Translations under genes and position numbers: made by a program
Notes under the pieces: model-generated
What the model saw: the letters and a program-made list of their open reading frames with translations, nothing else
Told to the model about the DNA's origin: nothing
Databases searched by the model: none
Shown: one piece after another, positions 21,588 to 60,315 of the stretch
Numbering within the stretch: position 1 is the first letter of the stretch
Layout: every line of letters starts with the position of its first letter
IMG/VR virus record: IMGVR_UViG_3300032236_002285
Span: 412,237 to 476,236 of that record
Direction: 5' to 3' (one strand)
Length of the DNA: 64,000 nucleotides

Positions 21588-21950
21588 GTTCTTTCTTCTG
21601 CGATACTTTTGTTTTGACTTTTCCACTTCATCTTCGTTGTTTCCGTACATATAGTTATAATAATAAAGAAGTGTTGCGTCTTGTAAGTTTTCTTTAATAC
21701 AATCATCACAAATAGCAATCACGAATTGATCACCATCATGTGTTGAACCATAACCAGCGTCAATGATATGAATTATACCATTATCAATCATTTCATTATT
21801 GACATTAACCAAACTACCATCTTCTCTTCTTTCTCTTTTCCAAATAACATCCTCTTCACTTTGAGGGGGTGAATCTTCAGTTGAGATTTTAGAACCCATT
21901 CTTGGTGTATAAGGAATTACATTATTTTTCTTACAACAGATGCAATACAT
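21570..21950 (-). CDS. Zinc-binding hypothetical protein, C-tag
   Basis: CICC...CDDC; ends RRKNLDNIV. Confidence 0.65.
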   Translation of the reverse strand: MYCICCKKNNVIPYTPRMGSKISTEDSPPQSEEDVIWKRERREDGSLVNVNNEMIDNGIIHIIDAGYGSTHDGDQFVIAICDDCIKENLQDATLLYYYNYMYGNNEDEVEKSKQKYRRRKNLDNIV

Positions 21951-22099
21951 TAGTTAAATATCTTTTTAATTTTTTTCATTCTTTTCTTTTCTCTACTTAA
22001 TGGTCTGTTATAAGTTATAATAGAAGATATTCTTGTTTCTAAATTAGGTAGAAACCTTATTTTAGCACCTGGCTTTAACTCAAAGAATTCTTTTTTCAT
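21950..22099 (-). CDS. 49-aa C-tag protein (not in ORF track)
   Basis: MKKEFFELKPG...REKKRMKKIKKIFN*; overlaps neighbours by TAATG/ATGA. Confidence 0.65.
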   Translation of the reverse strand: MKKEFFELKPGAKIRFLPNLETRISSIITYNRPLSREKKRMKKIKKIFN

Positions 22100-22281
22100 A
22101 TATCAAATATGTTTTTAATTTTTTTCATTCTTCTGCTTTGCTTAGAAGGAAACTTCATTGTCATAAAAGATGGATAAATAATTCTATCGTAGTTTTTAAT
22201 ACTATCTTGAATTTTACCCTTCTGTTCTTTTCTAAGTGATGCTAGTTCTTCTAACATCTTCTTCATTTGTTCTTCGTTCAT
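22096..22281 (-). CDS. Small C-tag protein
   Basis: Ends RMKKIKNIFDI. Confidence 0.65.
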   Translation of the reverse strand: MNEEQMKKMLEELASLRKEQKGKIQDSIKNYDRIIYPSFMTMKFPSKQSRRMKKIKNIFDI

Positions 22282-22421
22282 AGATTAAACAAGTTCTTTA
22301 TTTTCTCTTTTCTTTTTGTTCGTCTTGATGGTAGAATAGTTACTGAATGTGTTAAAGAGGATATACCACCTTGTAATCCACTTGGTAAAGTAAAAACAAA
22401 ATCAAAATTCTTTATATTCAT
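22278..22421 (-). CDS. 47-aa C-tag protein (not in ORF track)
   Basis: MNIKNFDFVF...RKEKIKNLFNL*; ATGA overlaps at both ends. Confidence 0.65.
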   Translation of the reverse strand: MNIKNFDFVFTLPSGLQGGISSLTHSVTILPSRRTKRKEKIKNLFNL

Positions 22422-23260
22422 TTCTCTGCTACTTTTCTAAAGTCAGTTAAGATAGTGTTTCTTAGTTCTCTGAACTCTTCATCTAATTCCTCCCAAGTCC
22501 ATCTTTTTCTTTTAATCTTATCCCAAATAAAGTTAGCACAAGAAAAATCTGTAATACGACCTGACGTTGCTATTTGAGTAGCAAACATAGGAATTCTCAA
22601 TGAGTGAAAAAGAGATTTAACTCCGGTGTGGTATTCGTCAGTTAGTTCTAATTTCTTTTTGCACTTGACCCAGCTATTAGAACTTATATGAGAAGTTGCG
22701 TGTCTGAGTTTAGCTAAGTTGATTTTGAAATTATCAAACTTGATAGTTTCTTTTAACTTAGCCCAATCTGGTGCCCAAATACATTCTAGATTGTTTATAC
22801 GATGCCATTCTAAATCAGCTTTGAACTTATCAGGAGTGTAAACGTGAATGTTGAATAAACCATTACGAATCTCAGTTGATTCAACAGAGTTGTTAGCGAT
22901 CATAATAATATCCCAATCAGAATCAGAGGTAGCTGTTCCGTATACCTGAGACCCGAAGATGTACACGTTAAAGACCCGACTTGGGTGTATCTTTGATGCT
23001 TTAATTATTGTTTCTAATGTTGGTATCATTATCTTATCTATTTTAATATTTCTTACTGCTGATGGATCTAAACTCTCTAAAATCCCCTCAATACAATCTT
23101 GACAAAGAATTGAAACTCCACCATCTAATGTGTGTATAGAAGCACACTTCACAACGTGAGAGTCACAACCATCACATATCTTATTATCATCAACAAACAT
23201 TAGAGATGCTTTAAGTACTTGTGGTCTTTCTGGAAACTTAGATAAGTGTATTTTTCTCAT
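22418..23260 (-). CDS. Zn-finger/C-tag module fused to DNA pol-beta-like nucleotidyltransferase
   Basis: CDGC..CQDC, internal RNIKIDKI, then YIFGSQVYGTATSDSDWDII (GS..YG....SDxD). Confidence 0.8.
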   Translation of the reverse strand: MRKIHLSKFPERPQVLKASLMFVDDNKICDGCDSHVVKCASIHTLDGGVSILCQDCIEGILESLDPSAVRNIKIDKIMIPTLETIIKASKIHPSRVFNVYIFGSQVYGTATSDSDWDIIMIANNSVESTEIRNGLFNIHVYTPDKFKADLEWHRINNLECIWAPDWAKLKETIKFDNFKINLAKLRHATSHISSNSWVKCKKKLELTDEYHTGVKSLFHSLRIPMFATQIATSGRITDFSCANFIWDKIKRKRWTWEELDEEFRELRNTILTDFRKVAEK

Positions 23261-23478
23261 ATTCCTAATTCTTTTAACTTGTCGTCTCTTAATTTACTAA
23301 GCAATTCATACTTACTACGAATGAATCTTGTTTCACCAATACAATTACCATTATCATCTTCTAAATCAAGACCTCTAATGTCATCATCACCTGTAATAGT
23401 GAACTGATGTCCTTTCTTATATACTTTACCGTTAAATTCAAAGTCCTCTAAAAAAACTACTCTGTCTCCAATTCTCAT
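23257..23478 (-). CDS. SH3-like small protein, C-tag
   Basis: IGDRVVF..KKGHQFTIT; ends RDDKLKELGI. Confidence 0.7.
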   Translation of the reverse strand: MRIGDRVVFLEDFEFNGKVYKKGHQFTITGDDDIRGLDLEDDNGNCIGETRFIRSKYELLSKLRDDKLKELGI

Positions 23479-23717
23479 TTTAATATTTTATTTATTTGTT
23501 GTTCTCTAAATTCTTCTAACGTCATAAAATGTTTAGCATCCATCTTCCTAAACTTACCATCATCACACTTGATAACATATGATGGTGCTACAGGTTTTAA
23601 TGTAACTGGATCATAAATAACAGGAGTCAATTCACACTCATAAAAGCTACCTGGCTTTACATAGTAAGCCATTTCATCAACTGGTGATATAGTATCTTTA
23701 AGATAGAGTGTAGCCAT
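23475..23717 (-). CDS. Small protein, C-tag
   Basis: Ends REQQINKILK; TATCTTTG 4 nt upstream of ATG. Confidence 0.7.
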   Translation of the reverse strand: MATLYLKDTISPVDEMAYYVKPGSFYECELTPVIYDPVTLKPVAPSYVIKCDDGKFRKMDAKHFMTLEEFREQQINKILK

Positions 23718-23721
23718 TTTA

Positions 23722-23729
23722 CAAAGATA
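23722..23729 (-). promoter_or_regulatory. Bacteroidota sigma70 -7 element
   Basis: TATCTTTG-TAAA-ATG. Confidence 0.65.
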
Positions 23730-23740
23730 GTTATTTTTAT

Positions 23741-23974
23741 TTAGATTCCTAATTCACTTAACTTTTTATCTCTATCCTCTTTAACTGAACAAGATTCACA
23801 TTTTGTAGGCTCTCCTCTGAATCCACCTTTATATAGGTCTAATTCTTTTTTACAAGATTCACAAAGCTCACCAATACCAATTGAAAATAATTCATCAGAA
23901 TCATATTTACCATATGACTTAGGTTCTTTCAAATCAAGATGTAAAATTGTTTTGATAAGATCTACAAATTTCAT
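23741..23974 (-). CDS. Zn-finger small protein, C-tag
   Basis: CESC..CESC; ends RDKKLSELGI. Confidence 0.7.
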   Translation of the reverse strand: MKFVDLIKTILHLDLKEPKSYGKYDSDELFSIGIGELCESCKKELDLYKGGFRGEPTKCESCSVKEDRDKKLSELGI

Positions 23975-24198
23975 ATACCTAATTCATTTAGTTTATCTTC
24001 TCTTAAATCTACTATATCAATACAATCTTCTGGTATTATAGCCCAACTAGTCAAACCATGTGACTTAATAACACGGTAATATTCATCTTTGTCATTAAGA
24101 CCAACCTCAAATACTTCACCCACTTTATCATGATACCAATATCTGTCTGTACTAGATTCTGAGTAATCACAAGAGCATTTTATAATTTTTACTTTCAT
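23971..24198 (-). CDS. SH3-like small protein, C-tag
   Basis: MKVKII..KVGEVFEV; ends REDKLNELGI. Confidence 0.7.
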   Translation of the reverse strand: MKVKIIKCSCDYSESSTDRYWYHDKVGEVFEVGLNDKDEYYRVIKSHGLTSWAIIPEDCIDIVDLREDKLNELGI

Positions 24199-24482
24199 AT
24201 TCCTAAATCATTTAGCTTAATATCTCTATCTAATTCAGTTGAGATATTTTTTAACTTCTTTGATAGAAACCACATTAAGCCAGAATCACCAAACTGATAT
24301 GGTTCTTCGGGCCAAGAGTCTCTATCTTTTGAGTTCATCTGTCTTGCTTCTTCGCACCATTCTTCTGGTATCAATTTATAGATTTCTTCATCCAAGTCAT
24401 TACAACCGTGATTATCAAATTCATCTTTAGCCATCATCAACATCTTTGATGATAACTCTAATAGCAATTTTATATCTTTCAT
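24195..24482 (-). CDS. Small protein, C-tag
   Basis: Ends RDIKLNDLGI. Confidence 0.7.
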   Translation of the reverse strand: MKDIKLLLELSSKMLMMAKDEFDNHGCNDLDEEIYKLIPEEWCEEARQMNSKDRDSWPEEPYQFGDSGLMWFLSKKLKNISTELDRDIKLNDLGI

Positions 24483-24706
24483 ATCCCTATGTGTTTAAGT
24501 TTCTTTTGTCTTAACAAGTTTAAGTATTCTGACTTTAATAAACAAAGAGTATGTCCATCCATTTGTCTATTTGGTACATCAAATGAAACTAAAATATCAT
24601 TCTCTCTTTGAGAGATAGTATGAATTTTAATATCCATTGGATTTTCTAAACCAATGTTCCATTTGTATAAACAAATGTCATATAACAACTCTTCATCTAA
24701 TATCAT
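24479..24706 (-). CDS. Small protein, C-tag
   Basis: Ends RQKKLKHIGI. Confidence 0.7.
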   Translation of the reverse strand: MILDEELLYDICLYKWNIGLENPMDIKIHTISQRENDILVSFDVPNRQMDGHTLCLLKSEYLNLLRQKKLKHIGI

Positions 24707-25065
24707 ATACCCAAACCATTTAACTTTTGATCTCTCTTATATAACAAAGAAACTTCAATGTTATTATCTTCTGGATAACTTAAAACATTTTGTAAGTAGT
24801 CATAAACTTCTTGAGTTCTACCTTCGTCTGATTCATATCCATAAAGATATCCACCTCTGAATATTCTACCATCAGATGGATCATCAATCTCACCTTGAGC
24901 AGTTAGTATCAATGATTCTATTTCACCTTCATCAATACCAAAAGATTTTAATTGATTAAGTAAATCAATCAAATCTTCCAATCTTTCTTTATAGTCCCAA
25001 CCCCAGTTGCCTCTAAGGTCTAATTGTAAGTGACCAATTGCGGTTTTCAATTCTTCTATATTCAT
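24703..25065 (-). CDS. Small protein, C-tag
   Basis: Ends RDQKLNGLGI. Confidence 0.7.
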   Translation of the reverse strand: MNIEELKTAIGHLQLDLRGNWGWDYKERLEDLIDLLNQLKSFGIDEGEIESLILTAQGEIDDPSDGRIFRGGYLYGYESDEGRTQEVYDYLQNVLSYPEDNNIEVSLLYKRDQKLNGLGI

Positions 25066-25277
25066 ATTCCTATTTTTTCTAAATTATCTATTCTTGTTTT
25101 TACTTTAACTGATATCCAATGTTCATCACCACAAAATTGAGATTCCGGATCAGTTATACTGGCTTCTGAGCCGTGTAAGTGACAAGCAAACTCAACACAC
25201 CAATTAGCTGATGTGTATAGTTCAGGTCTGCTTTTATCAATAAAAAACAAACAATTTTTACAACACTTTTCTCTCAT
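25062..25277 (-). CDS. Cys-rich small protein, C-tag
   Basis: CCKNC..C..C..C; ends RIDNLEKIGI. Confidence 0.7.
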   Translation of the reverse strand: MREKCCKNCLFFIDKSRPELYTSANWCVEFACHLHGSEASITDPESQFCGDEHWISVKVKTRIDNLEKIGI

Positions 25278-25528
25278 ATTCCTAAATCGGTTAAAGTGTT
25301 ATCTAATTTCAAATCTTTATTCCATTCTTCTAACTCATTTAAATAATATTCTTTGCTTACCCATTTAGCACCATTATAAACTGCCTTATCCATTCCATAC
25401 CAAACGGTTGCCATTGCTTTATCAAACTCAACATAAAGACCGTTGTGAGGTGTATCTATGCTTACGAGTATACCAAACCCATCTTCAGTTTTAACCTCTT
25501 GAAATATTCTTAAAAATGATGGTTTCAT
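25274..25528 (-). CDS. Small protein, degenerate C-tag
   Basis: Ends KLDNTLTDLGI. Confidence 0.7.
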   Translation of the reverse strand: MKPSFLRIFQEVKTEDGFGILVSIDTPHNGLYVEFDKAMATVWYGMDKAVYNGAKWVSKEYYLNELEEWNKDLKLDNTLTDLGI

Positions 25529-26352
25529 ATAGCAACTAAATCTTCGTATTTAAATTTTGTTTGTTTTTTCTTTTTATTAATGAACTTAACCTCATTTACC
25601 ACTAAATCACCTTTTTCTATCTCAGATTTAATTTTATCAAATGTTTCTTTTTTTGGTTCAAATAATTTAAGTGAGTCCCAAATGCTACCAGAATGTATTG
25701 AAGCATTATAAACTTCTATCAAACCATCTTTATAGTCATATGAAAACCAAACACCTTCTACCCAAACAGATCTACCTCTTTGAATATTAAATGCGATATC
25801 AAGTGCAACTTCTCTCCAGTAAGATTTAGTGAGAGCTTCACAAGCTGGTTTTGACCAATCTAATATACCTCTAGCATCCTTGACATTCTCAGGAAAACTA
25901 ACTTCATATTTTACTCCTTCAATTCCATCCACACTAAATCTTCTCTCTTCTGAATAGTGACCCGCGTATTTGAGTTTATCTTTTTGGTGAACTACTGGTA
26001 TAGTCCATTCATCAATATTGCTAAATTCTGGATTTCTTTCTAAAAATGTTTTTAGCTTAATACTCACATTTGATGAGGTTTTGTAATGATCATACCCATT
26101 AACGCCTGTTATAAATTTAGGCGATGTATCTGATTTAGGATTAAAAAAGAAACCAACATTTATTGTAAGAACATCCCAGTTGTTAGCATTGAAACTTAAT
26201 CCGTAGATATCACGACTACACAAAGGCCTGCTGTCAATAGAAGGTGGACAAATACCAATTAAATCCTTAGTATATCCTGGTGAGTTTAGAATTTCTTGTC
26301 TAATGACTTCTAATACCGGATGGTCTTTTTTTATTGTATAAATTTTTTTCAT
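25525..26352 (-). CDS. Hypothetical protein
   Basis: 275-aa ORF, ATGA-coupled, no C-tag. Confidence 0.7.
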   Translation of the reverse strand: MKKIYTIKKDHPVLEVIRQEILNSPGYTKDLIGICPPSIDSRPLCSRDIYGLSFNANNWDVLTINVGFFFNPKSDTSPKFITGVNGYDHYKTSSNVSIKLKTFLERNPEFSNIDEWTIPVVHQKDKLKYAGHYSEERRFSVDGIEGVKYEVSFPENVKDARGILDWSKPACEALTKSYWREVALDIAFNIQRGRSVWVEGVWFSYDYKDGLIEVYNASIHSGSIWDSLKLFEPKKETFDKIKSEIEKGDLVVNEVKFINKKKKQTKFKYEDLVAI

Positions 26353-26864
26353 ATTCCTAATTTATTTAATACTTTACTTCTAATGTTTGCTTTAGTGTCC
26401 CAATATTTCTTTGTGTCTAAGTAATACAACTCAATATCACCTTTTGATTGGTCTAAAAATCTAATCTTCCAATCTGCTGATGTTTCTTTAACATCAATAA
26501 TAACAAGTTCAGTACCTTTTGAAATCTTCCACCAGTTTGGCTTCTGACTCGGATCGCTGTGATTGATATATTTCTTAAATATACCATCATAATAGAAATC
26601 TTTTTTAACTACAACTATCTCACCAACTTGAGGAACTTGATAGCCACTTCTATCAAAGTCAACCATTCCATCATAAATAAGAATTCGATAGAGACCTAAG
26701 ACACAAAGTATCAATATCATTGACACACCGAAGAATAGATTGCCAGTTTGTATGTTAATCATACTAAAGGCAACAATCGAAACCATGAAAAGAAACTTAA
26801 ATACTTCATTTCTGTCTAACCAACGATTCAATCTAAAAATACTATTCTTTAACATGCTAACCAT
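26349..26864 (-). CDS. Two-TM membrane protein + SH3-like domain, C-tag
   Basis: Two hydrophobic helices; VGEIVVVK; ends RSKVLNKLGI. Confidence 0.7.
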   Translation of the reverse strand: MVSMLKNSIFRLNRWLDRNEVFKFLFMVSIVAFSMINIQTGNLFFGVSMILILCVLGLYRILIYDGMVDFDRSGYQVPQVGEIVVVKKDFYYDGIFKKYINHSDPSQKPNWWKISKGTELVIIDVKETSADWKIRFLDQSKGDIELYYLDTKKYWDTKANIRSKVLNKLGI

Positions 26865-27190
26865 ATACTTTCTTTTGGTAATTTATCTAAAACTTCATCA
26901 ATTTTAATTTGTCTTTTATAAGCAATCATCTTACTCAAAGTATCTCTGAGAAAGGTTAATGTTTTTTGCTTTCTCGTTTCACTTCTGAATTTAGTATTCT
27001 CGGTTTGTCTGATATTTGATTTCATTTGTTCAATATTAATCTTCATATCAAAATTATAATCATTAGCATTCTGCCAATAGAGAATTTCATCATTTTTTAA
27101 GATGATGAAATCCTTCTTTTCATTGAAAGGACATTTTAATTCCTCAATGATTTGATACCACTCTCCGTTATTACTTGACATTATTCTCAT
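26849..27190 (-). CDS. Hypothetical protein, near-terminal C-tag
   Basis: RQIKIDEVL near C-terminus. Confidence 0.6.
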   Translation of the reverse strand: MRIMSSNNGEWYQIIEELKCPFNEKKDFIILKNDEILYWQNANDYNFDMKINIEQMKSNIRQTENTKFRSETRKQKTLTFLRDTLSKMIAYKRQIKIDEVLDKLPKESIWLAC

Positions 27191-28143
27191 GACCCAAATA
27201 AACTATTTAATAAATCATCACGATGTGACTGAACATCTTCAAAACAAGAATACTGAAACCAATTTGAACGATTGTCGTCACCATAAATTAAAACATTTAC
27301 ATAACCATTAGAAATGCTTGTACTACGAACTTCATAATATTGGTCTTTAGTAAGACTTTTCTGACCATAATTATAAACATCATTCAAACACTTTAATCTT
27401 GTTCCTTCAGGAACTTTCATCAACTTAGATATCTTTTCAGAAATTGAACTAATGATATAATCAGAGTTTAATTTTCTAAAATCAATTTTACTATCATCAA
27501 CAATCTGAGCCAAACTACTCAATAACTTACGAGTTACATCAATCTCACGCTTAGGTACACCAGAGAAGTCTAACTCTTTATCTATATACCAACGAACTGA
27601 TGATTCAATTATTGATTGATTTTTGAAATAAGAATAATGTTCTTTACGATCATCATAACTATCATAGACATCAATGTTATTTTCCATGATATAGTTAATC
27701 ATTGGGACAATACAATACTTGAAACCCTCAATATGTTCGTGACTTCTGCGACCAGAAGTTCTACGACCTCTACTAGTTACACTGGGTTTGGAAACCCAAC
27801 GACCATTTAGATAACGATCAAAAGTAGCACCATCATTTAGTATCTCATTGAACTGACGTTGAGTTCTATTAAGTAAAAACTTCTTAAATCTTTCATTGTT
27901 AGTTTGTTCAACTAACATTGGTTTTAATCTACGCCAAGTCATACCTTTCATAACAGGATTAAATCCTGCGTTGAAACAATTAGTTAAAAAAGAACCAAAA
28001 CTAGCAAAGTCACCAAGACCTAACTTGTTCATTGTACCATAACTAACTTGACCCTGCTCATATTCAGATATGATAGGGAATATCTCTTTTGCTTCTTTGT
28101 AAGTTTCTAAGTTCTTTTTAATTAGATCGTAGTTTAACTTCAT
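27187..28143 (-). CDS. Hypothetical protein with C-terminal SH3-like module, C-tag
   Basis: GTRLKCLND..LTKDQYYEVR; ends RDDLLNSLFGS. Confidence 0.7.
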   Translation of the reverse strand: MKLNYDLIKKNLETYKEAKEIFPIISEYEQGQVSYGTMNKLGLGDFASFGSFLTNCFNAGFNPVMKGMTWRRLKPMLVEQTNNERFKKFLLNRTQRQFNEILNDGATFDRYLNGRWVSKPSVTSRGRRTSGRRSHEHIEGFKYCIVPMINYIMENNIDVYDSYDDRKEHYSYFKNQSIIESSVRWYIDKELDFSGVPKREIDVTRKLLSSLAQIVDDSKIDFRKLNSDYIISSISEKISKLMKVPEGTRLKCLNDVYNYGQKSLTKDQYYEVRSTSISNGYVNVLIYGDDNRSNWFQYSCFEDVQSHRDDLLNSLFGS

Positions 28144-28439
28144 AGTTTAGATATGATTTTAGAAACACTTTTGTTGATCTCATCAAAAGTAGGAACACCT
28201 TCACCGATGTAAACAAAAGCTATATTCTTGTTATTGATTGTTGATTTTCTAACAGATTCTTTCATTAATCTTTTGATTCTATTTCTATCAACAGCTCTTT
28301 TGAACTTCTTAGATGAAACAGCAAAAAGAAAAGAAGTAGATTCAGATTCTAAAACTTTAGCCAATACGATACCATTTGAAACGGACTTACCCCTTTCAAA
28401 AAGTGCATCAATTGATATCTTATTTTTTAGAATATTCAT
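28140..28439 (-). CDS. rnpA: Ribonuclease P protein component
   Basis: IDALFERGK, FAVSSKKFKRAVDRNRIKRLMKE (RNR motif). Confidence 0.88.
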   Translation of the reverse strand: MNILKNKISIDALFERGKSVSNGIVLAKVLESESTSFLFAVSSKKFKRAVDRNRIKRLMKESVRKSTINNKNIAFVYIGEGVPTFDEINKSVSKIISKL

Positions 28440-28443
28440 TAAG

Positions 28444-28474
28444 CAAAGATAAGAAATATTTTTGATAAAACAAA
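28444..28474 (-). promoter_or_regulatory. Bacteroidota sigma70 promoter (-33 TTTG / -7 TATCTTTG)
   Basis: TTTG-N19-TATCTTTG-CTTA-ATG(rnpA). Confidence 0.75.
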
Positions 28475-28501
28475 AAACCCACCAATTACTTGATGGGTTT
28501 T
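28472..28501 (-). terminator. Terminator after clpP
   Basis: aaaaccca..tgggtttt hairpin. Confidence 0.6.
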
Positions 28502-28517
28502 AATTCTAAAAAAAGAA

Positions 28518-29276
28518 TTACTTCTTTTTCTTATCAGTGCCAGGTACTTGTAAGATTTCTCTTTGATAGTATTCATCGAAACCATCCATTAAAGTTGTGA
28601 TTGAAGATGTTTTATCACTAATGATAATTTCATCAATAAATCCAAAGTCTAATGCTTCTTGTGAATTTAACCACTTGTCTCTACGAGCACTTTCCAAAAC
28701 TTCTTCAAATGATTTACCAGAGTTTTCAGCCAACATCTTAAACAAGATGTAGTTGTACTTTTCAGACTCCATTTGAGAGATACGATTATCTTGAACGTGT
28801 CCTTGAGCACCAGAACTAACTTGGTGAATCATTACTTTAGAGAAGTTCAAAGAAGATCGTTTACCTTTTGTACCAGATGATAGTAAGATAGACCCCATTG
28901 ATGCTGCCATACCAGTATTAATAGTTGCTACATCAGATTTGATATATCTCATTACGTCTACCATAGATAAACCAGATTTAACTGAGCCACCTGGTGAGTC
29001 AACGTGCATTGTGATGTCGCTGTTGTTTAAATTATCCAAGAACATTAACTGAGCTTGAACAATAGTTGACATATTGTCGTTAACAACACCGGCTACCCAC
29101 AAAATACGATCTCTCATTAAACGAGAGAAGATATCCATTTGAGTTACACGCATTTCTCTTTCTTCAAGAATGTATGGTGTCATACTATTCTCCAAGTTTT
29201 TATCGAAATAGTGTAGGTTAAGTGACGAGATACCTTCACTCAAGGCGTACTTTTGAAATTCTTTTCCGTAATTCAT
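28518..29276 (-). CDS. clpP: ATP-dependent Clp protease proteolytic subunit
   Basis: MDIFSRLMRDRI, SPGGSV, GMAASMG (catalytic Ser), MIHQ (His), RDKWL. Confidence 0.95.
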   Translation of the reverse strand: MNYGKEFQKYALSEGISSLNLHYFDKNLENSMTPYILEEREMRVTQMDIFSRLMRDRILWVAGVVNDNMSTIVQAQLMFLDNLNNSDITMHVDSPGGSVKSGLSMVDVMRYIKSDVATINTGMAASMGSILLSSGTKGKRSSLNFSKVMIHQVSSGAQGHVQDNRISQMESEKYNYILFKMLAENSGKSFEEVLESARRDKWLNSQEALDFGFIDEIIISDKTSSITTLMDGFDEYYQREILQVPGTDKKKK

Positions 29277-29301
29277 ATTAGTTATATTAGTTGTTTGTTA
29301 T

Positions 29302-29667
29302 TTAGTTTATAGAATATTTTCTTTTGTGAATGATTTCTTTTACCTCAGATAGTTCTTTAGCATACTTTCTACGAAGATGATCTTTAAGATTACTTGGTAA
29401 CATTCTTTGATTATCAATTATTTCTAAAACGGCTACAACACCTCGTTCTTTAATATCATTATCAATCTTTAGTAGTTCTTCATCTGAAAGCATAGTAGGT
29501 TCAACCCAAGTATCTAAAATCATTTCTCCTTTAAGGAAATTCTCCCAAAGGTCTGCTTTTTTGGTACCAGGTACAGGAATAGAATTGATATACTTATCAA
29601 TCTGTTCGAACTTATCTTCTGATAGTAAGCCTTTAGCTTTTTCTTTTGCTGCTTCTAATCTTGTCAT
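29302..29667 (-). CDS. Hypothetical protein
   Basis: 121-aa ORF. Confidence 0.65.
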   Translation of the reverse strand: MTRLEAAKEKAKGLLSEDKFEQIDKYINSIPVPGTKKADLWENFLKGEMILDTWVEPTMLSDEELLKIDNDIKERGVVAVLEIIDNQRMLPSNLKDHLRRKYAKELSEVKEIIHKRKYSIN

Positions 29668-29669
29668 TT

Positions 29670-30146
29670 TTATTTATTTAACAATTCATTTATTTTATCG
29701 TCTCTAACAATAGACTTATCAACGGATTTTTTTACATCCATTACATATTTGTTTACTTTTTCTTCATCAAGATCTCTTTTCTTTTGAGTATCTAAAAAAT
29801 AAAGAGTATCGAATATGAATTTTTGTTTTGAGTAAGAATTATCTTTTCTTGAGTCAAAAATTAACTCTTCAATATCATTACCATAGCTTTTATTTTCAGT
29901 AATAATAACGGTTGTTATATATCTATTGCGGAATAATCTTTTTATCCTATATACGTTAATAGCGTATCTATAATTCATACCATCTTCTGATATTTTAAAT
30001 GAGTAGTAATCTGATTTTTTATTAATATCATCAATATCTCTATTTCTAAAAGAAATACGAGAAGTGTTTAACATCTTTATCCAATCTTTTCTACTTTTTA
30101 TAGAATTTAAGATAGTATCTAATAACGGGTTATATTTATTCATCAT
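29670..30146 (-). CDS. Hypothetical protein, C-tag
   Basis: Ends RDDKINELLNK. Confidence 0.7.
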   Translation of the reverse strand: MMNKYNPLLDTILNSIKSRKDWIKMLNTSRISFRNRDIDDINKKSDYYSFKISEDGMNYRYAINVYRIKRLFRNRYITTVIITENKSYGNDIEELIFDSRKDNSYSKQKFIFDTLYFLDTQKKRDLDEEKVNKYVMDVKKSVDKSIVRDDKINELLNK

Positions 30147-30148
30147 AA

Positions 30149-30601
30149 CTAATTTAATATTTGATTAATCTTACGGTCTCTTCGCATTTGATCATCAACA
30201 ACAAGCTCAATATCTTTCCTAGAAATCCATTTTTTGTTCATGAAATCAATAATACCTTGTCGGTTTTGAGGATCTCTACCTACTTTATCAGTTGATGTGA
30301 AATCAATTGCTTTGACTTTTACTTTATCCGTTGAGACTTCAAGTATTTCAATCTCATAAGTAACCTTAAAATTCTGTTCTTCTTTGGTACCACCATGGTA
30401 ACAAAGACCATAGTTTGGTATAATAGCTTTATCACCTGGTTCTATTGAGACCAATTCTTCAAGTTGGCTAACTTTTTCGTCAACTTTGGATATCATGCCG
30501 GTGATTTCTTTTCGTAAGTTAGTATTATCTGAATATAACTTACCAATAAAAAATAAACTAATTAGTAAAGTAAAAGACAATACAATTAATGATATTTCCA
30601 T
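30149..30601 (-). CDS. N-terminally anchored membrane protein, C-tag
   Basis: N-terminal TM; ends RDRKINQILN. Confidence 0.7.
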   Translation of the reverse strand: MEISLIVLSFTLLISLFFIGKLYSDNTNLRKEITGMISKVDEKVSQLEELVSIEPGDKAIIPNYGLCYHGGTKEEQNFKVTYEIEILEVSTDKVKVKAIDFTSTDKVGRDPQNRQGIIDFMNKKWISRKDIELVVDDQMRRDRKINQILN

Positions 30602-32035: not shown

Positions 32036-32308
32036 ATGAATAAGACAGATTTAGTAAACTCGATAGCTAAACAAACAGGTCTATCAAAGTCAAAGTCTAA
32101 CGAGGTTATCAACGCTTTCGTTTCAGCTGTATCTGAATCACTTTCAAAAGGTGAGAAAGTTACACTTGTAGGCTTCGGTACATTTACCACTTCCGAAAGA
32201 GAAGCTCGTAAAGGTCGTAACCCTAAGACTGGTGAAGTTATTAACATCTCGGCTAAAACCGTTGCTCGCTTCAAAGCCGGCTCTGAACTTAGCAAGAGTG
32301 TTAATTAA
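32036..32308 (+). CDS. hup: HU family DNA-binding protein
   Basis: MNKTDLV..IA, GEKVTLVGFGTF, RKGRNPKTGEVI..ARFKAGSEL. Confidence 0.96.
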   Translation: MNKTDLVNSIAKQTGLSKSKSNEVINAFVSAVSESLSKGEKVTLVGFGTFTTSEREARKGRNPKTGEVINISAKTVARFKAGSELSKSVN

Positions 32309-32523: not shown

Positions 32524-33039
32524 CTAATTCAACATATAAGTGAAACCTTTTGAAATAGTATCACCATATTCTTTTTTCATTTCGTGATCTCTGTATTTAA
32601 TACCAACAATCAAATCAGAGCAACCATCTAATAATTCAAGTGTTTCAGCAATTATCAAGCTTGGATCAAAGTCTTCATCAGTTTCTAAAACATAGTTAAA
32701 GAAATTACCCTTTTGATAATCCTCTGCTGAAAAATAAGTTGTATCATTGAATTTATAATCATCTTCATACTCCTCAAATTCAAAATCATCGTCTGATTCC
32801 CAAACTACTTCACCCGATTCATCTTTAACAATGATTTGAATATTCTCACCACCGGGATAAATACCCATCACGATATCTTCACTATCTAAAAAATCAATAC
32901 CTAAAACCTCATTGATTTGTTCGTGTTCCATTAAATCATCTTCAACACCACCTTCTTGTAGTTGTTCGTATTGTTCTTCATTTAATTTATGAATAAAAGC
33001 TTCAGCACCTTTACCATTAACTTCAATTGTATATTTCAT
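32524..33039 (-). CDS. Acidic hypothetical protein
   Basis: 171 aa, very D/E-rich. Confidence 0.7.
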   Translation of the reverse strand: MKYTIEVNGKGAEAFIHKLNEEQYEQLQEGGVEDDLMEHEQINEVLGIDFLDSEDIVMGIYPGGENIQIIVKDESGEVVWESDDDFEFEEYEDDYKFNDTTYFSAEDYQKGNFFNYVLETDEDFDPSLIIAETLELLDGCSDLIVGIKYRDHEMKKEYGDTISKGFTYMLN

Positions 33040-33040
33040 A

Positions 33041-33352
33041 TTATCTTTTTACATACATTATACAATCAACATTACCTAAAGTTTTTATGTTGATTTTTTT
33101 ATACTCAAGACCTTCATATTCATCTATTAAAGGCATCATTTCTTCTGGTATATGAACAATTGCTCCTAAAATAGGTGATTTTTTATTCTCACTTGGAATA
33201 GCAACATTATAGTAAATACCACTCATTTTAACTTTTATAATATCCCAACCATTGATGAAGTCTAAATCAGGCTCAACATAAAACTCTTGACCAAACTCTC
33301 TAAGTTGAACTTCTTTTTCACAAAGTGTACCATATGAGAATAACTTAATCAT
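33041..33352 (-). CDS. Gamma-glutamylcyclotransferase (GGCT/AIG2)-like protein
   Basis: LFSYGTL N-terminus, LIDEYEG..YKK motif. Confidence 0.75.
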   Translation of the reverse strand: MIKLFSYGTLCEKEVQLREFGQEFYVEPDLDFINGWDIIKVKMSGIYYNVAIPSENKKSPILGAIVHIPEEMMPLIDEYEGLEYKKINIKTLGNVDCIMYVKR

Positions 33353-33746
33353 TGATTATGCTTTTAATAGTTATATCTCTTTTAAGTTTTTTGAATGTTT
33401 CTCTATCACAATCTTTCCAATTCATTTTGAAATGAAATGCAAAAGCTTGTTCGAATCCAAACTCACCAACACCAACACTATCTTCTAATAATTTTCTTTC
33501 TTTTACAGGTAGTGATATCCAATCTAAACAAAATTCTGGTGTTGCTTTTTTAGCAAAATCTTGAATCATTCTATCCCACTCAAAATCTAATGAGTCTTGC
33601 TCATCAAATTTATGACCACAAAAACAACATTGATATAATTGTTCATCATCAAGTATGATAACTAAGTCAGTTGCCTTGCCATCTGGATTACAAGTTTTAC
33701 AATCACATTTATTTATCTTCTCACATTTTGGACAAAGCAAAGCCAT
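33345..33746 (-). CDS. Zn-binding hypothetical protein, C-tag
   Basis: CPKC..CDCKTC..CCFCG; ends RDITIKSIIND. Confidence 0.65.
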   Translation of the reverse strand: MALLCPKCEKINKCDCKTCNPDGKATDLVIILDDEQLYQCCFCGHKFDEQDSLDFEWDRMIQDFAKKATPEFCLDWISLPVKERKLLEDSVGVGEFGFEQAFAFHFKMNWKDCDRETFKKLKRDITIKSIIND

Positions 33747-33949
33747 TATAAATTATTTTTATAATTATTAAGAAAATTCTTTTCATGTATTGATAAACTA
33801 TCATATCCTTCTTTAGATATTCTATCTAAAATAGAGTTTAGTTTATCTTCTCTACCTTTACGCATAGAATTGAATTCATCATCACTGATAACTCTTTTTC
33901 TAACTTGCTTAGGTTTAGACTTAAATAAATTTTTGAACCAATTAAACAT
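33746..33949 (-). CDS. DUF6576-like small protein
   Basis: REDKLNSILDRISKEGYDSLSIHEKNFL resembles the helical domain at the C-terminus of Bacteroidota rhomboids; probable start ATG 33949. Confidence 0.65.
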   Translation of the reverse strand: MFNWFKNLFKSKPKQVRKRVISDDEFNSMRKGREDKLNSILDRISKEGYDSLSIHEKNFLNNYKNNL

Positions 33950-33951
33950 AA

Positions 33952-34914
33952 TTAACAACCATATACGCTTTCGTGAGGTGAAAACCTAAGTGTAGGTTTT
34001 TCATCTAATACGTTAGCAATTTTTAACTCTCTATTTATATTTTTAATATTTTCAATTTCTTTCCAACCTCTATCCTCTAACTTAGCTTTTCTATGTTGTG
34101 CTCTTTTTTGAGAATACATTTTAGCAAACATATTAACTGAGAAAACTTTGCTCTGACAATGAACAATAGCATTAGGAAAATCCTCATAAAGTGTTTCACC
34201 ATCATAAGAAACACCACAACAACTAAAGTCAACATTAGCAATTAAATCTGAAAATCCTTGACGATAAACTTGTTCATCTTTACCTTTAGAACCTATTGAT
34301 GGTCTAATTAACTGAACAATCTTTTTACCTTTAATCCAAGTGTGTGGCTCATTAATAACGTGAATATCAGAATAAATTTCTTGAAGATCTTTACCATTCA
34401 ACATTTCCATATACTGATAATCATTTTGTTCTAAAACAGATTCAATATACCTAAGTGCTTTAGAGCCACAAAGAATATCAACATCATTGATTGGTTGTTC
34501 TGCTAGAATATCTCTGATGGCTCCACCAAAAATTCTAACTAAATTAAACTTACTTTTGAATAATTCATCTGAATCAAATTCTAAATATTCATTTAATGAT
34601 TGTCTAATCTTATCTTCTTGAGTTACTGCTATGTGCCTCAGTTTTTCTTCTCTCATAAATTGTAGGTAAATATCCTTCTTTATACTTAAAGTCTCGTATT
34701 TGTTTATAACATCATCCGGATTTTTATAATTAGTAAGAGTAACTGCAAAACTAACACTAATAGTATCTTCAATTTCAAATACTCTTGTTAATCTAATCTT
34801 TAGTTTATATTCATTAAGATTAGGTTTAAGAAGGGTGAATTTTTTATCTAACCAATTATCATTAGTTACCACATTGTAAACTATTTTCTCAACTAACTTG
34901 TCGTAGATTTCCAT
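33952..34914 (-). CDS. C-tag module fused to class II (CCA-adding/poly(A) polymerase head) nucleotidyltransferase
   Basis: IFGGAIRDIL..INDVDIL and DFSCCG motifs; REEKLRHIA at domain junction, RELKIANVL near end. Confidence 0.8.
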   Translation of the reverse strand: MEIYDKLVEKIVYNVVTNDNWLDKKFTLLKPNLNEYKLKIRLTRVFEIEDTISVSFAVTLTNYKNPDDVINKYETLSIKKDIYLQFMREEKLRHIAVTQEDKIRQSLNEYLEFDSDELFKSKFNLVRIFGGAIRDILAEQPINDVDILCGSKALRYIESVLEQNDYQYMEMLNGKDLQEIYSDIHVINEPHTWIKGKKIVQLIRPSIGSKGKDEQVYRQGFSDLIANVDFSCCGVSYDGETLYEDFPNAIVHCQSKVFSVNMFAKMYSQKRAQHRKAKLEDRGWKEIENIKNINRELKIANVLDEKPTLRFSPHESVYGC

Positions 34915-34930
34915 AATTTACAAATATAAA

Positions 34931-34958
34931 AAAACCCTTTGATAATTCAAAGGGTTTT
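34931..34958 (-). terminator. Terminator after tyrosinase
   Basis: aaaaccctttga-taat-tcaaagggtttt. Confidence 0.75.
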
Positions 34959-34977
34959 AATAATTAGTTTTAAGATT

Positions 34978-36435
34978 TTATCTACCAGTGACGGTAACAT
35001 TATCAATAATCATATCAGATGTAACTTGATTATGCTTATAGATTGTTATATTATATTCACCAGAAGTAACTGATTCTTTTGATAACTCAAAATAGAATTT
35101 AGTATAAGGTCTGCCATTTGAATTCAATGGAGTGCAACATCCTTTTCTACAAGATTTACCTTGCATCTTATCATCAAAGCCAAAGAAGTTCATAAATCCA
35201 ACAAAGTATTTACTACCAGGATAATAGATTTCACTAGCTGGTATGTTTAAGTAAACTTCATAAATACCTCTTGGTACTTTATCAAAAGACACAGATACTT
35301 CCATATTCATTTTACGGAATGAATTATTATCAGATGTTAATAAACCATCAACTCTAAGACTTGTAAAACCTGAGGCAACCTTAACATTTACATTCTTATT
35401 AGCAATAACTTTAATAGGTGTTGCTTGAACTAATGTGTTTTGAGATTTAGGTTGAACCTTTGTATCATCAAAATCATAATCCATATTGTATATGATTTTA
35501 ATAACCGAATCCATTGTATATTCTACCTTTTTACCATTCTCATCAAAGAATACATAGGGCCATTCAACAGACTTCAATTCTTCTAAAGTAATCATTTTAC
35601 CATTTTCAGAATTAGTCCATTGTTGCCAGATTCTATCAATGTTAGAGTGATGTAACCAAAAAATTGGATCAAAACCAGCAGTTGGTACCCAACCCATTAA
35701 TCCTGTATTAGTAACAGAGTTTGTGATAGGATTGTTAAATTTAAGTAACCCTGTTGTATCATTACCAGCACCAATATAATCATGCATTGCTCCGTGAGGT
35801 GCCGCATTGATATTCATACAAAAAGTATAATAATCTGTATAAGACATTAACTTAGTCATATCTAATGCTCTTTCGATTTCACCAGAGATAGGGTAACCAT
35901 TGTTTAAACTATCATATCTACAAGATTCATATAAAGCTGACTTTGAATCTCTAAACATAACAGGCATCATTTTGTCAGAATCGTTTAAGTTTGTATAACC
36001 CCAATAAGGTAAAGCAAAGTCTTTCTTTCCTGATAATTTTCTTACAATCTTTTCAAAGTGCCAGATATAAAGTCTGTGCCAAACTAAGAAGTGTATTTTT
36101 TCTTTACCAGAAGGTGAGTGAGTACAATTGTCCCAAGCTTCTTTTAAATCAGCTACGGTGCTATAAGATTCACATAAAGGATTCTTACCAATTGAATCTG
36201 GAATCCAGTGCATTGCACCTTGATAGTACCAACTCATTGGATCAGTACATCCTTTCTCTCTCATAATAGTCAAAGCCTTATTCATAGCCTCAATATCTGA
36301 CTGAGCTTCTGTCGAGTTAGCATTCTTTCTAACAAAACGACCTATCTTATTATGTGCGAAGTGAGTATAAACAACACCAGTCATGATAGATAACACCAAT
36401 ATAATGATTAGTGATGAAATTGTTTTTCTATTCAT
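34978..36435 (-). CDS. Tyrosinase / polyphenol oxidase (type-3 copper) with N-terminal signal or TM anchor
   Basis: CuA AMHW..CTH..HFLVWHR, PYW; CuB PHGAMHDYIG..DPIFWLHHSNIDRIW. Confidence 0.92.
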   Translation of the reverse strand: MNRKTISSLIIILVLSIMTGVVYTHFAHNKIGRFVRKNANSTEAQSDIEAMNKALTIMREKGCTDPMSWYYQGAMHWIPDSIGKNPLCESYSTVADLKEAWDNCTHSPSGKEKIHFLVWHRLYIWHFEKIVRKLSGKKDFALPYWGYTNLNDSDKMMPVMFRDSKSALYESCRYDSLNNGYPISGEIERALDMTKLMSYTDYYTFCMNINAAPHGAMHDYIGAGNDTTGLLKFNNPITNSVTNTGLMGWVPTAGFDPIFWLHHSNIDRIWQQWTNSENGKMITLEELKSVEWPYVFFDENGKKVEYTMDSVIKIIYNMDYDFDDTKVQPKSQNTLVQATPIKVIANKNVNVKVASGFTSLRVDGLLTSDNNSFRKMNMEVSVSFDKVPRGIYEVYLNIPASEIYYPGSKYFVGFMNFFGFDDKMQGKSCRKGCCTPLNSNGRPYTKFYFELSKESVTSGEYNITIYKHNQVTSDMIIDNVTVTGR

Positions 36436-47892: not shown

Positions 47893-47923
47893 AAAAACCC
47901 TCTCAAATCGAGAGGGTTTTTTT
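47893..47923. terminator. Bidirectional terminator
   Basis: aaaaaccctctc-aaatc-gagagggttttt. Confidence 0.8.
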
Positions 47924-48194
47924 ATTTTAAAATATTATCAATCTTTTTATCACGTTCTTCTTCTAAATATTCATAAACCCAACCTGGGCAGTTTCCTTCT
48001 TCTTCACCTCTGAATGTATCTTCATTGATATCACATCCAGCAATATGGTCTTCATAACCATCTTCATGAGAAAACTTACAAGTATAACAATGCTTTGTTG
48101 CTTTATTAAAACAACACACTGGCTCATGTTTAGCCATCAAATCAGCATTTATATCTGTATGTGAACAATGGTCACACTTCCAAACTTGTTTCAT
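47922..48194 (-). CDS. Zn-finger protein, C-tag
   Basis: CDHC..HEPVC..CYTC; ends RDKKIDNILK. Confidence 0.7.
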   Translation of the reverse strand: MKQVWKCDHCSHTDINADLMAKHEPVCCFNKATKHCYTCKFSHEDGYEDHIAGCDINEDTFRGEEEGNCPGWVYEYLEEERDKKIDNILK

Positions 48195-54632: not shown

Positions 54633-54821
54633 ATGGTAAGAGTACCTTGTTATAACTGCGGAATAGGAATTGATTTAGAACCAATCGGGATTCGGTCGGG
54701 TTATGATACCTTATGTAAAGAATGTAAATGCCATATAGAATCAGATAAAAGAGATAAGAAGTTAGACAAACTATTGAAAAGAAATATATGGCAACGAATA
54801 AAACAACTTATAAAAATATAA
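54633..54821 (+). CDS. Zn-ribbon protein, C-tag + amphipathic tail
   Basis: CYNC..CKEC; RDKKLDKLL-KRNIWQRIKQLIKI. Confidence 0.65.
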   Translation: MVRVPCYNCGIGIDLEPIGIRSGYDTLCKECKCHIESDKRDKKLDKLLKRNIWQRIKQLIKI

Positions 54822-57306: not shown

Positions 57307-57310
57307 TATC

Positions 57311-59819: not shown

Positions 59820-60061
59820 TATTTAATTTCTAATACGTTAAATACGTTATCAATCTTAGCTTCTCTGATATCTGCTAACTCTACATAATAGATAATAGCA
59901 GAGTATGATTCAATTGATCGATGAGGTCCAGAAGAAACACCTATTGAGTATTCTGTTTTGATAATCTGTCTGATATCAATTTTTTGTAGAAAGTCATTAA
60001 CCGCAACTTCTAATGTATGAGTATGGTCCTCATTAAATATCTTTACTTTAGCATTTATCAT
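59819..60061 (-). CDS. Small protein, C-tag
   Basis: REAKIDNVF near end. Confidence 0.65.
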   Translation of the reverse strand: MINAKVKIFNEDHTHTLEVAVNDFLQKIDIRQIIKTEYSIGVSSGPHRSIESYSAIIYYVELADIREAKIDNVFNVLEIK

Positions 60062-60315
60062 ATACCTAGTTCTTTTAATTTCTTATCTCTTTCTTGTTCT
60101 ACATTCAGCGCAACATTACGCCAATCCGTTTTTTCATCACCAGAATGTGCCACTCTAACTTGATTAATAAAACACCTTGGACAATATCTAAATTCAGTAT
60201 TTACTGGAAAGGTATATGATGGTATTACTCTATGTGTTAAATTAACAGGTGATGTTATATGGGGAACATCTTCTTTATAGTAGTTCCACTTATGACCAAA
60301 CAACTTACACTTCAT
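60058..60315 (-). CDS. DUF1660-like small protein, C-tag
   Basis: MKCKLFGHKW..CPRC; ends RDKKLKELGI. Confidence 0.7.
   Translation of the reverse strand: MKCKLFGHKWNYYKEDVPHITSPVNLTHRVIPSYTFPVNTEFRYCPRCFINQVRVAHSGDEKTDWRNVALNVEQERDKKLKELGI

What the first reader, a model, noticed from the sequence alone, without database searches (positions are those of the whole stretch)
33746..33949. DUF6576-like protein may reveal the origin or partner of the C-tag
Here the tag-like REDKLNSIL continues into DRISKEGYDSLSIHEKNFL, resembling the small helical domain (DUF6576, from memory) at the C-terminus of Bacteroidota rhomboid proteases (..KIDxILDKISxSGYxSLTxxEKxFL). Both tag variants (..KIDxIL and ..KLxELGI) align with parts of this domain. 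Inference: the tag is a truncated mimic of a host interaction module, so tagged proteins may dock on the host partner of that domain.
Basis: inference. Interest (0 to 1): 0.6.

Follow-up and report, generated by a model that had tools for sequence, protein, structure and literature searches.

The report
Phage copy of rhomboid tail domain
A 476-kb freshwater phage encodes a 67-residue free-standing copy of the small helical tail (DUF6576) that Bacteroidota bacteria carry on a membrane rhomboid protease, probably as a decoy for that tail's partner; this copy also contains the phage's common C-terminal peptide tag, but the tag and the domain are not demonstrably related as families.

Summary
The ORF at window 33746-33949 (minus strand, 67 aa) matches Pfam DUF6576 above the curated cut-off (36.4 bits against 27.3). 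In 63 of 64 Bacteroidota genomes found, the same domain ends a ~290-aa rhomboid protease. The phage protein aligns with the whole post-membrane tail of those proteases. It folds as a confident two-helix hairpin and has 46-57% identical 61-67-aa orthologues in other phage contigs.

The tag is also real. About 113 of 657 genes in this 476-kb genome end in R-[DE]-x-K-[LI]-x-x-[IL]-[LG], on unrelated protein bodies. The conservation is at peptide level, and the tag is common in other low-GC viral contigs.

The claim that the tag is a truncated DUF6576 is not supported:
- Profile-profile comparison is not significant (probability 0.7-9%).
- None of 30 tag tails hit DUF6576 in Pfam.
- Host helix 1 lacks the tag's near-invariant Arg and carries Glu where the tag has Lys.
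- DUF6576-bearing phages exist without tags.

Helix 1 of this particular copy does carry a full-strength tag core (19.4 bits; true tags have a median of 18.4), but most of its orthologues do not.

Best reading: a captured rhomboid-tail mimic. DUF6576 is a separate portable docking module in these phages. Its partner is unknown.

The parts
33746..33949 (-). Whole gene: 67-aa stand-alone DUF6576 protein, a homologue of the rhomboid tail. The stop codon is at 33746-33748.
   Evidence: ORF list and sequence. Pfam PF20216 at 36.4 bits against a cut-off of 27.3. Orthologues of 61-67 aa at 46-57% identity in other viral contigs. The gene is packed tightly between same-strand genes. Contigs from other freshwater and lake metagenomes cover it at 80-95% identity.
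33914..33949 (-). Residues 1-12: N-terminal amphipathic segment rich in W, F and L with flanking Lys. It is conserved in the orthologues and corresponds to the juxtamembrane start of the host rhomboid tail. I infer that it contacts the membrane surface.
   Evidence: Alignments A4 and A2. Hydrophobic moment 0.64, in the top 1.6% of proteome 11-mers. AF2 confidence is low here, pLDDT 59-68. The role is inferred, not shown.
33854..33913 (-). Residues 13-32: basic linker followed by the S-D-D-E-F-N stretch, which aligns with the [ST]-D-x-E-Y-N stretch of host tails. Helix 1 starts at residue 23.
   Evidence: Alignment A2. AF2 helix 23-47.
33827..33853 (-). Residues 33-41: the tag-like 9-mer inside helix 1. 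It matches the tag core R-[DE]-x-K-[LI]-[NKD]-x-[IL]-[LG] at every conserved position.
   Evidence: PSSM score 19.4 bits against a tag median of 18.4; null frequency 7.6e-6. Tag HMM domain score 7.7 bits, internal, 26 residues from the C-terminus.
33761..33883 (-). Residues 23-63: the Pfam DUF6576 match, covering helix 1, the conserved G-Y-D-S-L turn and helix 2.
   Evidence: Invariant L, G, L, E and L columns in 60 sequences. pLDDT 89-97.
33752..33790 (-). Residues 54-66: helix 2 of the hairpin. Its ending is shared with the phage-type DUF6576 modules (F-L-x-N-Y...N-L).
   Evidence: AF2 helix 54-66. Alignments A1 and A2.
33345..33746 (-). Context: the next gene downstream (133 aa, no Pfam family). 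It ends in a weak copy of the tag.
60058..60315 (-). Context: an example of a variant-A tagged protein (ends ...R-D-K-K-L-K-E-L-G-I). It is one of about 40 tagged genes in the window.
47922..48194 (-). Context: an example of a variant-B tagged protein (ends ...R-D-K-K-I-D-N-I-L-K). It lies before a convergent gene, so the tag is not a start signal for a downstream gene.

Best explanation
Shown. The ORF is a real, conserved phage gene. Its 67-aa product is a free-standing homologue of the entire cytoplasmic C-terminal tail of the Bacteroidota rhomboid protease (Pfam DUF6576). It has a short amphipathic N-terminus, a basic linker and a two-helix hairpin.

Inferred.
- The gene was captured from a Bacteroidota host; the closest tails are from freshwater Crocinitomicaceae and Fluviicola. 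It has since been inherited within a group of low-GC, mostly very large phages.
- It works as a molecular mimic of the rhomboid tail. It would sit at the inner face of the membrane and occupy or capture whatever normally engages that tail: an unknown host factor, or the tail or protease itself. This would uncouple or redirect the host rhomboid during infection.
- DUF6576 is a portable docking module in these phages. It ends at least 11 unrelated protein families.
- The far more numerous 10-residue C-terminal tag is a separate module with its own determinants, an invariant Arg and a Lys.
- The full tag consensus in helix 1 of this copy is a lineage-specific feature. It may let the protein be read by the tag's receptor, but it does not show common origin.
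For: - Family membership: Pfam hit above the curated cut-off.
- Host architecture: Rhomboid plus C-terminal DUF6576 in 63 of 64 loci.
- Homology runs from the juxtamembrane F-K-x-K-P-K and S-D-x-E-[FY]-N stretches to the last helix. Best identities are 59% to a Crocinitomicaceae tail and 54% to a Fluviicola tail.
- AF2 model: pLDDT 84.3, helices 23-47 and 54-66.
- Orthologues of 61-67 aa at 46-57% identity in at least 8 contigs. In one 281-kb contig they keep synteny with the HU gene and the 171-aa gene.
- ESM Atlas holds clusters of 72-80-aa DUF6576 proteins, 63% of them viral.
- DUF6576 ends at least 11 BLAST-unrelated phage protein families, with up to 7 copies per genome.
- The N-terminal 11-mer has a hydrophobic moment of 0.64, in the top 1.6%.
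- Tag and domain have different determinants.
- DUF6576 occurs without tags.
Against: - No partner of DUF6576 is known, and nothing was found in the literature. The decoy step is therefore pure inference.
- No structural analogue points to a function.
- The domain is too short (about 45 aa) to name a donor lineage or to exclude transfer from phage to host.
- Helix 1 of this copy and of one orthologue scores inside the true-tag range (19.4 and 21.8 bits). Every host tail scores below that range, with a maximum of 12.7. Chance explains this poorly, so a functional link to the tag system remains possible.
- The co-occurrence of tags and DUF6576 fits either shared ancestry or shared function.
Confidence: 0.45

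Rival explanations
1. The short C-terminal tag is a truncated copy of DUF6576 helix 1, so the roughly 110 tagged proteins dock on the same host partner as the rhomboid tail.
For: - In this protein the tag core and helix 1 coincide exactly.
- Helix 1 is the top-scoring tag-like 9-mer in 33 of 64 host rhomboids, and within the top 3 in 49 of 64.
- hhalign places the two profiles in the expected register.
- Tags and DUF6576 occur in the same phage group.
- A host tail exists with a near-identical core (L033, 8.8 bits).
Against: - Profile comparisons are not significant.
- None of 30 tags hit the Pfam model.
- Host tails have a median of 0.8 bits under the tag matrix.
- The tag's Arg and Lys positions are occupied by E/N/S/K and by Glu in hosts.
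- The conserved turn and helix 2 are absent from tags.
- Long-form phage modules are not tag-like.
- Tag-free DUF6576 phages exist.
- No tag/DUF6576 swap was found on homologous bodies.
- Only about 5% of all tags continue with the Asp that follows in the domain.
Confidence: 0.12
2. The 67-aa protein is a bridge or client of the tag system. Its helix 1 has been selected toward the tag consensus so that the tag's receptor binds it, while the hairpin binds the rhomboid-tail partner. This would link the two systems.
For: - Two orthologues score 19.4 and 21.8 bits, inside the true-tag range and above all 64 host tails.
- Stand-alone orthologues were found only in tag-bearing contexts, at 1-3.8 tags per 10 kb.
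- As a family they are closer to the tag than host tails are: [RK] at position 0, E at 1, L at 4 and N at 5.
Against: - The largest orthologue subgroup has Lys at position 0 and Glu at position 3, and scores 3.7 bits or less.
- True tags lie within 8 residues of the C-terminus (85 of 91), whereas this one is 26 residues from the end, and its hydrophobic face is probably packed on helix 2.
Confidence: 0.15
3. DUF6576 is a self-associating hairpin that forms a four-helix bundle. The phage's DUF6576 proteins, including this one, would then dock directly on the host rhomboid's own tail, either to reach the membrane or to control the protease.
For: - A 45-residue two-helix hairpin is unlikely to be stable alone.
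- The domain is appended to many unrelated phage proteins, as a targeting module would be.
- Hosts often have two tandem rhomboid genes.
Against: No test of self-association was run. The strongly conserved G-Y-D-S-L turn suggests recognition by something other than a copy of itself.
Confidence: 0.2
4. The resemblance between helix 1 and the tag is coincidence. Both are K/E/D/N/I/L-rich helices in a 30% GC genome, and the gene has nothing to do with the tag.
For: - Only four positions are shared at family level.
- Orthologues vary from -0.4 to 21.8 bits.
- Profile tests are negative.
Against: A 19.4-bit match occurs once in 132,280 internal 9-mers, and a second orthologue reaches 21.8 bits.
Confidence: 0.3

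Closest known systems
C-terminal DUF6576 tail of Bacteroidota rhomboid proteases (Pfam PF20216 following PF01694)
   Same: - The same Pfam family, scored above the cut-off.
- The same conserved residues: I-L-D-[KR]-I-S, G-Y-D-S-L, E-K-x-[FL]-L.
- Homology also covers the upstream basic and S-D-x-E-[FY]-N stretches.
   Different: - There is no rhomboid domain and no membrane helices; the protein is only 67 aa.
- Helix 1 carries Arg and Lys where hosts have E/N/S/K and Glu.
- The C-terminal ending is of the phage type.
Small stand-alone 'DUF6576 domain-containing proteins' (ESM Atlas clusters of 72-80 aa, mostly viral or Bacteroidota)
   Same: The same size and family. The best cluster scores 0.92, has 109 members and is 63% viral. 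Orthologues also exist in IMG/VR contigs.
   Different: None is characterised. Only this copy and one orthologue carry a full tag consensus.
Phage long-form DUF6576 proteins (domain at the C-terminus of 130-450-aa proteins)
   Same: The same domain used as a terminal module. Two further copies lie in this genome, at G000 34876-35370 and 274398-274853.
   Different: They have an L-D-[LIV]-D-[ST]-I-L helix 1 that is not tag-like, they lack the upstream tail homology, and they carry N-terminal bodies of at least 11 unrelated families.
Shared terminal peptides that bring many phage proteins to one hub, such as the C-terminal clamp-binding tails of T4 gp43, gp33 and gp55, or the T4 capsid-targeting sequence (from my own knowledge, not tested here)
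   Same: A short terminal peptide is shared by otherwise unrelated phage proteins. This is an analogy for the tag, and possibly for DUF6576 as a module.
   Different: There is no sequence similarity, no receptor is known here, and the scale (about 17% of all genes) is far larger.

Membership tests
Pfam DUF6576 (PF20216) | Profile HMM score above the curated gathering score | tested here: met
   36.4 bits against 27.3, E 5.9e-9, profile positions 4-44 of 47. The genome search gave the same place at 36 bits.
Pfam DUF6576 (PF20216) | Conserved residues of the family: I-L-D-[KR]-I, G, S-L, E-K and L in helix 2 | tested here: met
   All invariant and near-invariant columns of the 60-sequence alignment A2 are present.
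Pfam DUF6576 (PF20216) | Usual architecture: C-terminal to a Rhomboid (PF01694) membrane domain | tested here: not met
   The ORF has 67 aa with no other Pfam domain. Hosts have Rhomboid plus DUF6576. Stand-alone and phage-fused forms are nevertheless members of the family.
Pfam DUF6576 (PF20216) | Small helical fold | tested here: met
   AF2 gives a two-helix hairpin with pLDDT 89-97 over residues 21-60. No solved homologue exists to compare with.
Phage C-terminal tag R-[DE]-x-K-[LI]-x-x-[IL]-[LG] | Core 9-mer scoring in the range of true tags | tested here: met
   19.4 bits against a tag median of 18.4 and a 10th percentile of 11.4.
Phage C-terminal tag R-[DE]-x-K-[LI]-x-x-[IL]-[LG] | Position within about 8 residues of the C-terminus | tested here: not met
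   The core ends 26 residues before the C-terminus. 85 of 91 strong tag hits are C-terminal.
   hhalign probability 0.7% and 9%. The tag HMM scores host tails at 0-4 bits. None of 30 tags hit PF20216.
   No partner is known for either. One complex prediction gave no verdict.
Rhomboid protease (PF01694) | Rhomboid membrane domain with a catalytic Ser-His pair | tested here: not met
   No Rhomboid hit, and the protein has only 67 aa.

The most novel reading that the evidence does not exclude
DUF6576 and the 10-residue tag are the long and short forms of one docking code. A host or phage hub that normally reads the rhomboid tail is used by this phage group to gather more than 100 otherwise unrelated small proteins. 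The 67-aa protein, which carries both signatures in one helix, is the evolutionary or functional link between them.
Probability: 0.1. Interest if true: 0.85.

Novelty: new member of a known kind. Interest (0 to 1): 0.42.

Why it matters
- The finding gives the uncharacterised DUF6576 domain a context. Phages of Bacteroidota have taken the cytoplasmic tail of a host rhomboid protease. They use it both alone and as a terminal module on many unrelated proteins. This suggests that the tail is an interaction module worth targeting, and that the rhomboid or its partner matters during infection.
- It separates this domain from the much more abundant C-terminal tag, which sits on about 17% of the genes of a 476-kb phage and is widespread in viral metagenomes. 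The tag remains unexplained and is the more remarkable feature.
- The 67-aa protein is a convenient bait for finding the partner of either system.

Tried and rejected
- **Complex prediction.** I ran the 67-aa protein (alignment A2) with a 34-residue tagged C-terminus (alignment A3). The result was 'no answer', score 0.00. This is neither support nor evidence against.
- **Foldseek against PDB.** Only generic helical hairpins came back, none with E at or below 0.001.
- **PHROGs and Pfam on DUF6576 proteins.** PHROGs on 10 and Pfam on 9 phage DUF6576 proteins, largely the same set, found nothing beyond DUF6576.
- **Pfam on tagged proteins.** Ten tagged proteins gave no family.
- **Cultured relatives.** Megablast of 8 kb and tblastn of the protein against 50,697 phage records found no cultured relative. 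The only hit was a 7.5-kb faecal contig at E 1e-3.
- **Literature.** No paper mentions DUF6576, and nothing relevant was found on Bacteroidota rhomboid tails or on such a tag.
- **Tag as a DNA- or translation-level signal: rejected.**
  - Synonymous codons at tag positions follow genome usage. For example, Arg is AGA 72% and CGT 20%.
  - Tags also precede convergent genes and long spacers.
- **Tag as a MinD/FtsA-like membrane-targeting amphipathic helix: rejected.** The median hydrophobic moment is 0.25, against a proteome median of 0.27, and mean hydrophobicity is -0.29.
- **Tag borrowed from host protein C-termini: no support.**
  - There were no variant-A matches in 5 candidate host genomes.
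  - There were no C-terminal hits of 8 bits or more in 2163 ORFs from the host loci.
- **Module swap.** No homologous body was found with the tag in one protein and DUF6576 in another, within the loci held.
- **Large protein searches.** They were not used, because Pfam and the locus scans settled the identity.

Full report
**Setting**

The window is the last 64 kb (412237-476236) of a 476,236-bp IMG/VR virus record with 29.9% GC and an estimated completeness of 97%. A greedy ORF set gives about 657 genes. The record has no near relative among 50,697 deposited phage genomes.

Contigs that match the region at 80-95% identity occur in several freshwater and lake metagenomes. A Bacteroidota host from fresh water is therefore likely, but this is an inference.

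**The observation**

The ORF at window 33746-33949 on the minus strand encodes 67 residues. Pfam DUF6576 (PF20216) matches residues 23-63 with E 5.9e-9 and 36.4 bits, above the curated cut-off of 27.3.

- The start is the ATG at 33949, not the upstream TTG. All orthologues begin with the same M-[FL]-N-W motif.
- The gene abuts its same-strand neighbours.
- A relative in a lake metagenome lacks the upstream 320-aa gene (33951-34912) but keeps this ORF.
- Of the two best-supported differences inside the ORF, one is synonymous (N38). The other changes the variable residue 54 (codon positions worked out by hand).

**What the domain is in cells**

A pattern scan of one genome per species found 64 Bacteroidota loci encoding a relative. 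In 63 of them the domain ends a protein of about 220-320 aa. Every one tested carries PF01694 Rhomboid followed by DUF6576. The exception, L033, is a rhomboid split into two overlapping ORFs.

The usual gene order is mutL, rhomboid, rhomboid with DUF6576, then an Exo_endo_phos gene.

**What the phage protein is**

In a 60-sequence alignment the phage protein matches host tails over more than the Pfam domain. The match also covers the upstream [ST]-D-x-E-[FY]-N stretch and the basic F-K-x-K-P-K stretch that follows the last membrane helix of the rhomboids. The protein therefore corresponds to the whole post-membrane tail.

- The best matches are a Crocinitomicaceae tail (59% identity) and a Fluviicola tail (54%). 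The domain is too short to name a donor.
- AlphaFold2 with this alignment gives mean pLDDT 84.3. Helix 1 spans residues 23-47, a short turn lies at the conserved G-Y-D-S-L, and helix 2 spans residues 54-66. The first 22 residues have low confidence.
- Foldseek finds no informative analogue.
- Residues 1-11 have a hydrophobic moment of 0.64, in the top 1.6% of proteome 11-mers. I take this as a possible membrane-surface contact. That is an inference.

**Conservation**

- Orthologues of 61-67 aa with 46-57% identity occur in at least eight other viral contigs.
- In a 281-kb contig the gene lies near the same HU gene and the same 171-aa gene as in the window.
- The ESM Atlas holds clusters of 72-80-aa 'DUF6576 domain-containing proteins', the best of which is 63% viral.

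The protein is therefore a new member of a known but uncharacterised family.

**DUF6576 as a phage module**

This genome has two more DUF6576 proteins of 164 and 151 aa, with the domain at the C-terminus. Other viral contigs carry up to seven. The N-terminal bodies of these long forms fall into at least 11 BLAST-unrelated groups. In three proteins the domain is N-terminal. Neither PHROGs nor Pfam names any of the bodies.

The simplest reading is a portable docking module borrowed from the host.

**The tag**

A loose core pattern lies within 6 residues of the C-terminus in 113 of 657 genes, where about 7 are expected from its internal frequency. An HMM built from these gives 91 hits of 8 bits or more, and 85 of them are C-terminal.

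- The consensus is R-[DE]-x-K-[LI]-[NKD]-x-[IL]-[LG]-[IKN]. Arg is present in 107 of 113 tags and Lys in 76 of 113.
- The 113 protein bodies form 109 BLAST clusters.
- Ten tagged proteins have no Pfam family.
- Codon usage at tag positions follows the genome, and tags also precede convergent genes. The conservation is therefore at peptide level.
- A DNA pattern for one tag variant hit 43 stretches in about 35 viral contigs, where I estimate one or two by chance. Many of these contigs are 170-480 kb, and one 15-kb locus holds 19 tags. One 84.6-kb contig has 53 tags.
- Five candidate host genomes have no match, and 2163 ORFs from host loci have no C-terminal hit of 8 bits or more.

**Is the tag a truncated DUF6576?**

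Evidence in favour:
- In this protein the 9-mer R33-L41 scores 19.4 bits under the tag matrix. The tag median is 18.4, and only 1 of 132,280 internal 9-mers scores as high. One orthologue scores 21.8 bits.
- In 33 of 64 host rhomboids helix 1, in the same register, is the best-scoring 9-mer of the whole protein.
- 14 of 18 tag-bearing contigs, including all 5 that are near-complete, encode DUF6576.

Evidence against:
- Host helix 1 scores a median of only 0.8 bits. That score comes from [ILV]-[DN]-x-I-L alone. The Arg and Lys positions contribute -4.2 and -3.7 bits, with Glu in place of the Lys.
- Long-form phage modules score -7 to +5 bits.
- Most orthologues of this protein score 3.7 bits or less.
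- hhalign gives probability 0.7% and 9%.
- The tag HMM gives host tails 0-4 bits.
- None of 30 tag tails hit PF20216, even at E up to 10.
- Three DUF6576-bearing contigs have 0-1 tags.
- No homologous body carries the tag in one protein and the domain in another.
- The co-occurrence could reflect shared ancestry of one phage group rather than shared function.

I conclude that the two are separate modules whose hydrophobic pattern is alike. The overlap in this copy is lineage-specific. It could be functional but does not show origin.

**Mechanism**

- Shown: family membership, the host architecture, conservation, the hairpin model and the modular use in phages.
- Inferred: the protein mimics the rhomboid tail and occupies its unknown partner, or the tail itself.
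- One complex prediction of the protein with a tagged C-terminus gave no verdict and is not used as evidence.
- The idea that the tag is a membrane-targeting helix was rejected on hydrophobic moment.

- `read laying` was given 4,501 letters.
- No alternative genetic code was used.
- The large protein searches were not used.

Noticed in passing
Whole window, densest at 23257-30601 and 42478-62778; whole genome G000: About 113 of 657 genes (around 40 in the window) end in the peptide R-[DE]-x-K-[LI]-x-x-[IL] followed by L-G-I or I-L-[KN]. The protein bodies are BLAST-unrelated, the conservation is at peptide level, and the tag recurs in about 35 other low-GC viral contigs, with up to 53 tags in 85 kb. 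The receptor and function are unknown. This is the most remarkable feature of the region.
   Followed up: partly
window 21950-22099, 22096-22281, 22278-22421 (minus strand): Three tandem micro-ORFs of 47-61 aa end in a third, more basic variant, R-x-K-K-I-K-[KN]-[IL]-F. Similar endings occur elsewhere in the genome, for example at G000 127466, 181969, 317295, 338665 and 464230.
   Followed up: no
window 54633-54821 and 54788-54976 (plus strand): Two overlapping 62-aa paralogues carry the tag core internally, followed by a 14-residue basic amphipathic extension (K-R-x-I-W-x-x-I...).
   Followed up: no
window 34978-36435 (minus strand): A 485-aa phage protein with a hydrophobic N-terminal segment and a Pfam Tyrosinase domain (E 1.3e-28). 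This is an unusual auxiliary gene for a phage.
   Followed up: no
window 32036-32308 (plus strand) and 33041-33352 (minus strand): An HU-type DNA-binding protein (PF00216, E 1.4e-33) and a GGACT/AIG2-like gamma-glutamyl cyclotransferase (E 8e-8) lie close to the DUF6576 gene. HU and the 171-aa gene at 32524-33039 are syntenic with the orthologue in a 281-kb contig.
   Followed up: partly
window 33951-34912: A contig in a lake metagenome joins 33950 directly to 34913, so a relative lacks the 320-aa gene upstream of the DUF6576 ORF while keeping the ORF itself.
   Followed up: no
window 56749-57333 and 57311-57922 (minus strand): Two adjacent paralogues of about 200 aa have nearly identical C-terminal 40 residues.
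   Followed up: no
Host loci L004-L067: A conserved gene order in Bacteroidota: mutL, rhomboid, rhomboid with DUF6576, then an Exo_endo_phos family gene. The upstream rhomboid is present in 56 loci, mutL in 43 and the downstream gene in 37. Whether the tail contacts either neighbour is unknown.
   Followed up: partly
L136, L140 (about residue 17) and L139 (residues 16-47): In three phage proteins, one of them in a 501-kb contig with 23% GC, DUF6576 sits at the N-terminus instead of the C-terminus.
   Followed up: no
G000 223844-224272 (outside the window): A 142-aa ORF has a strong tag hit (14.7 bits) at residues 20-36, far from its C-terminus. It may be a mis-called start, a fusion of two genes, or a true internal tag.
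   Followed up: no
L033 1752-2605: A host rhomboid is split into two overlapping ORFs (Rhomboid 190 aa, DUF6576 127 aa). Its helix 1 core differs from the phage's by one residue (T for R), making it one of the most tag-like host tails: second of 64 at 8.8 bits, behind L024 at 12.7.
   Followed up: partly
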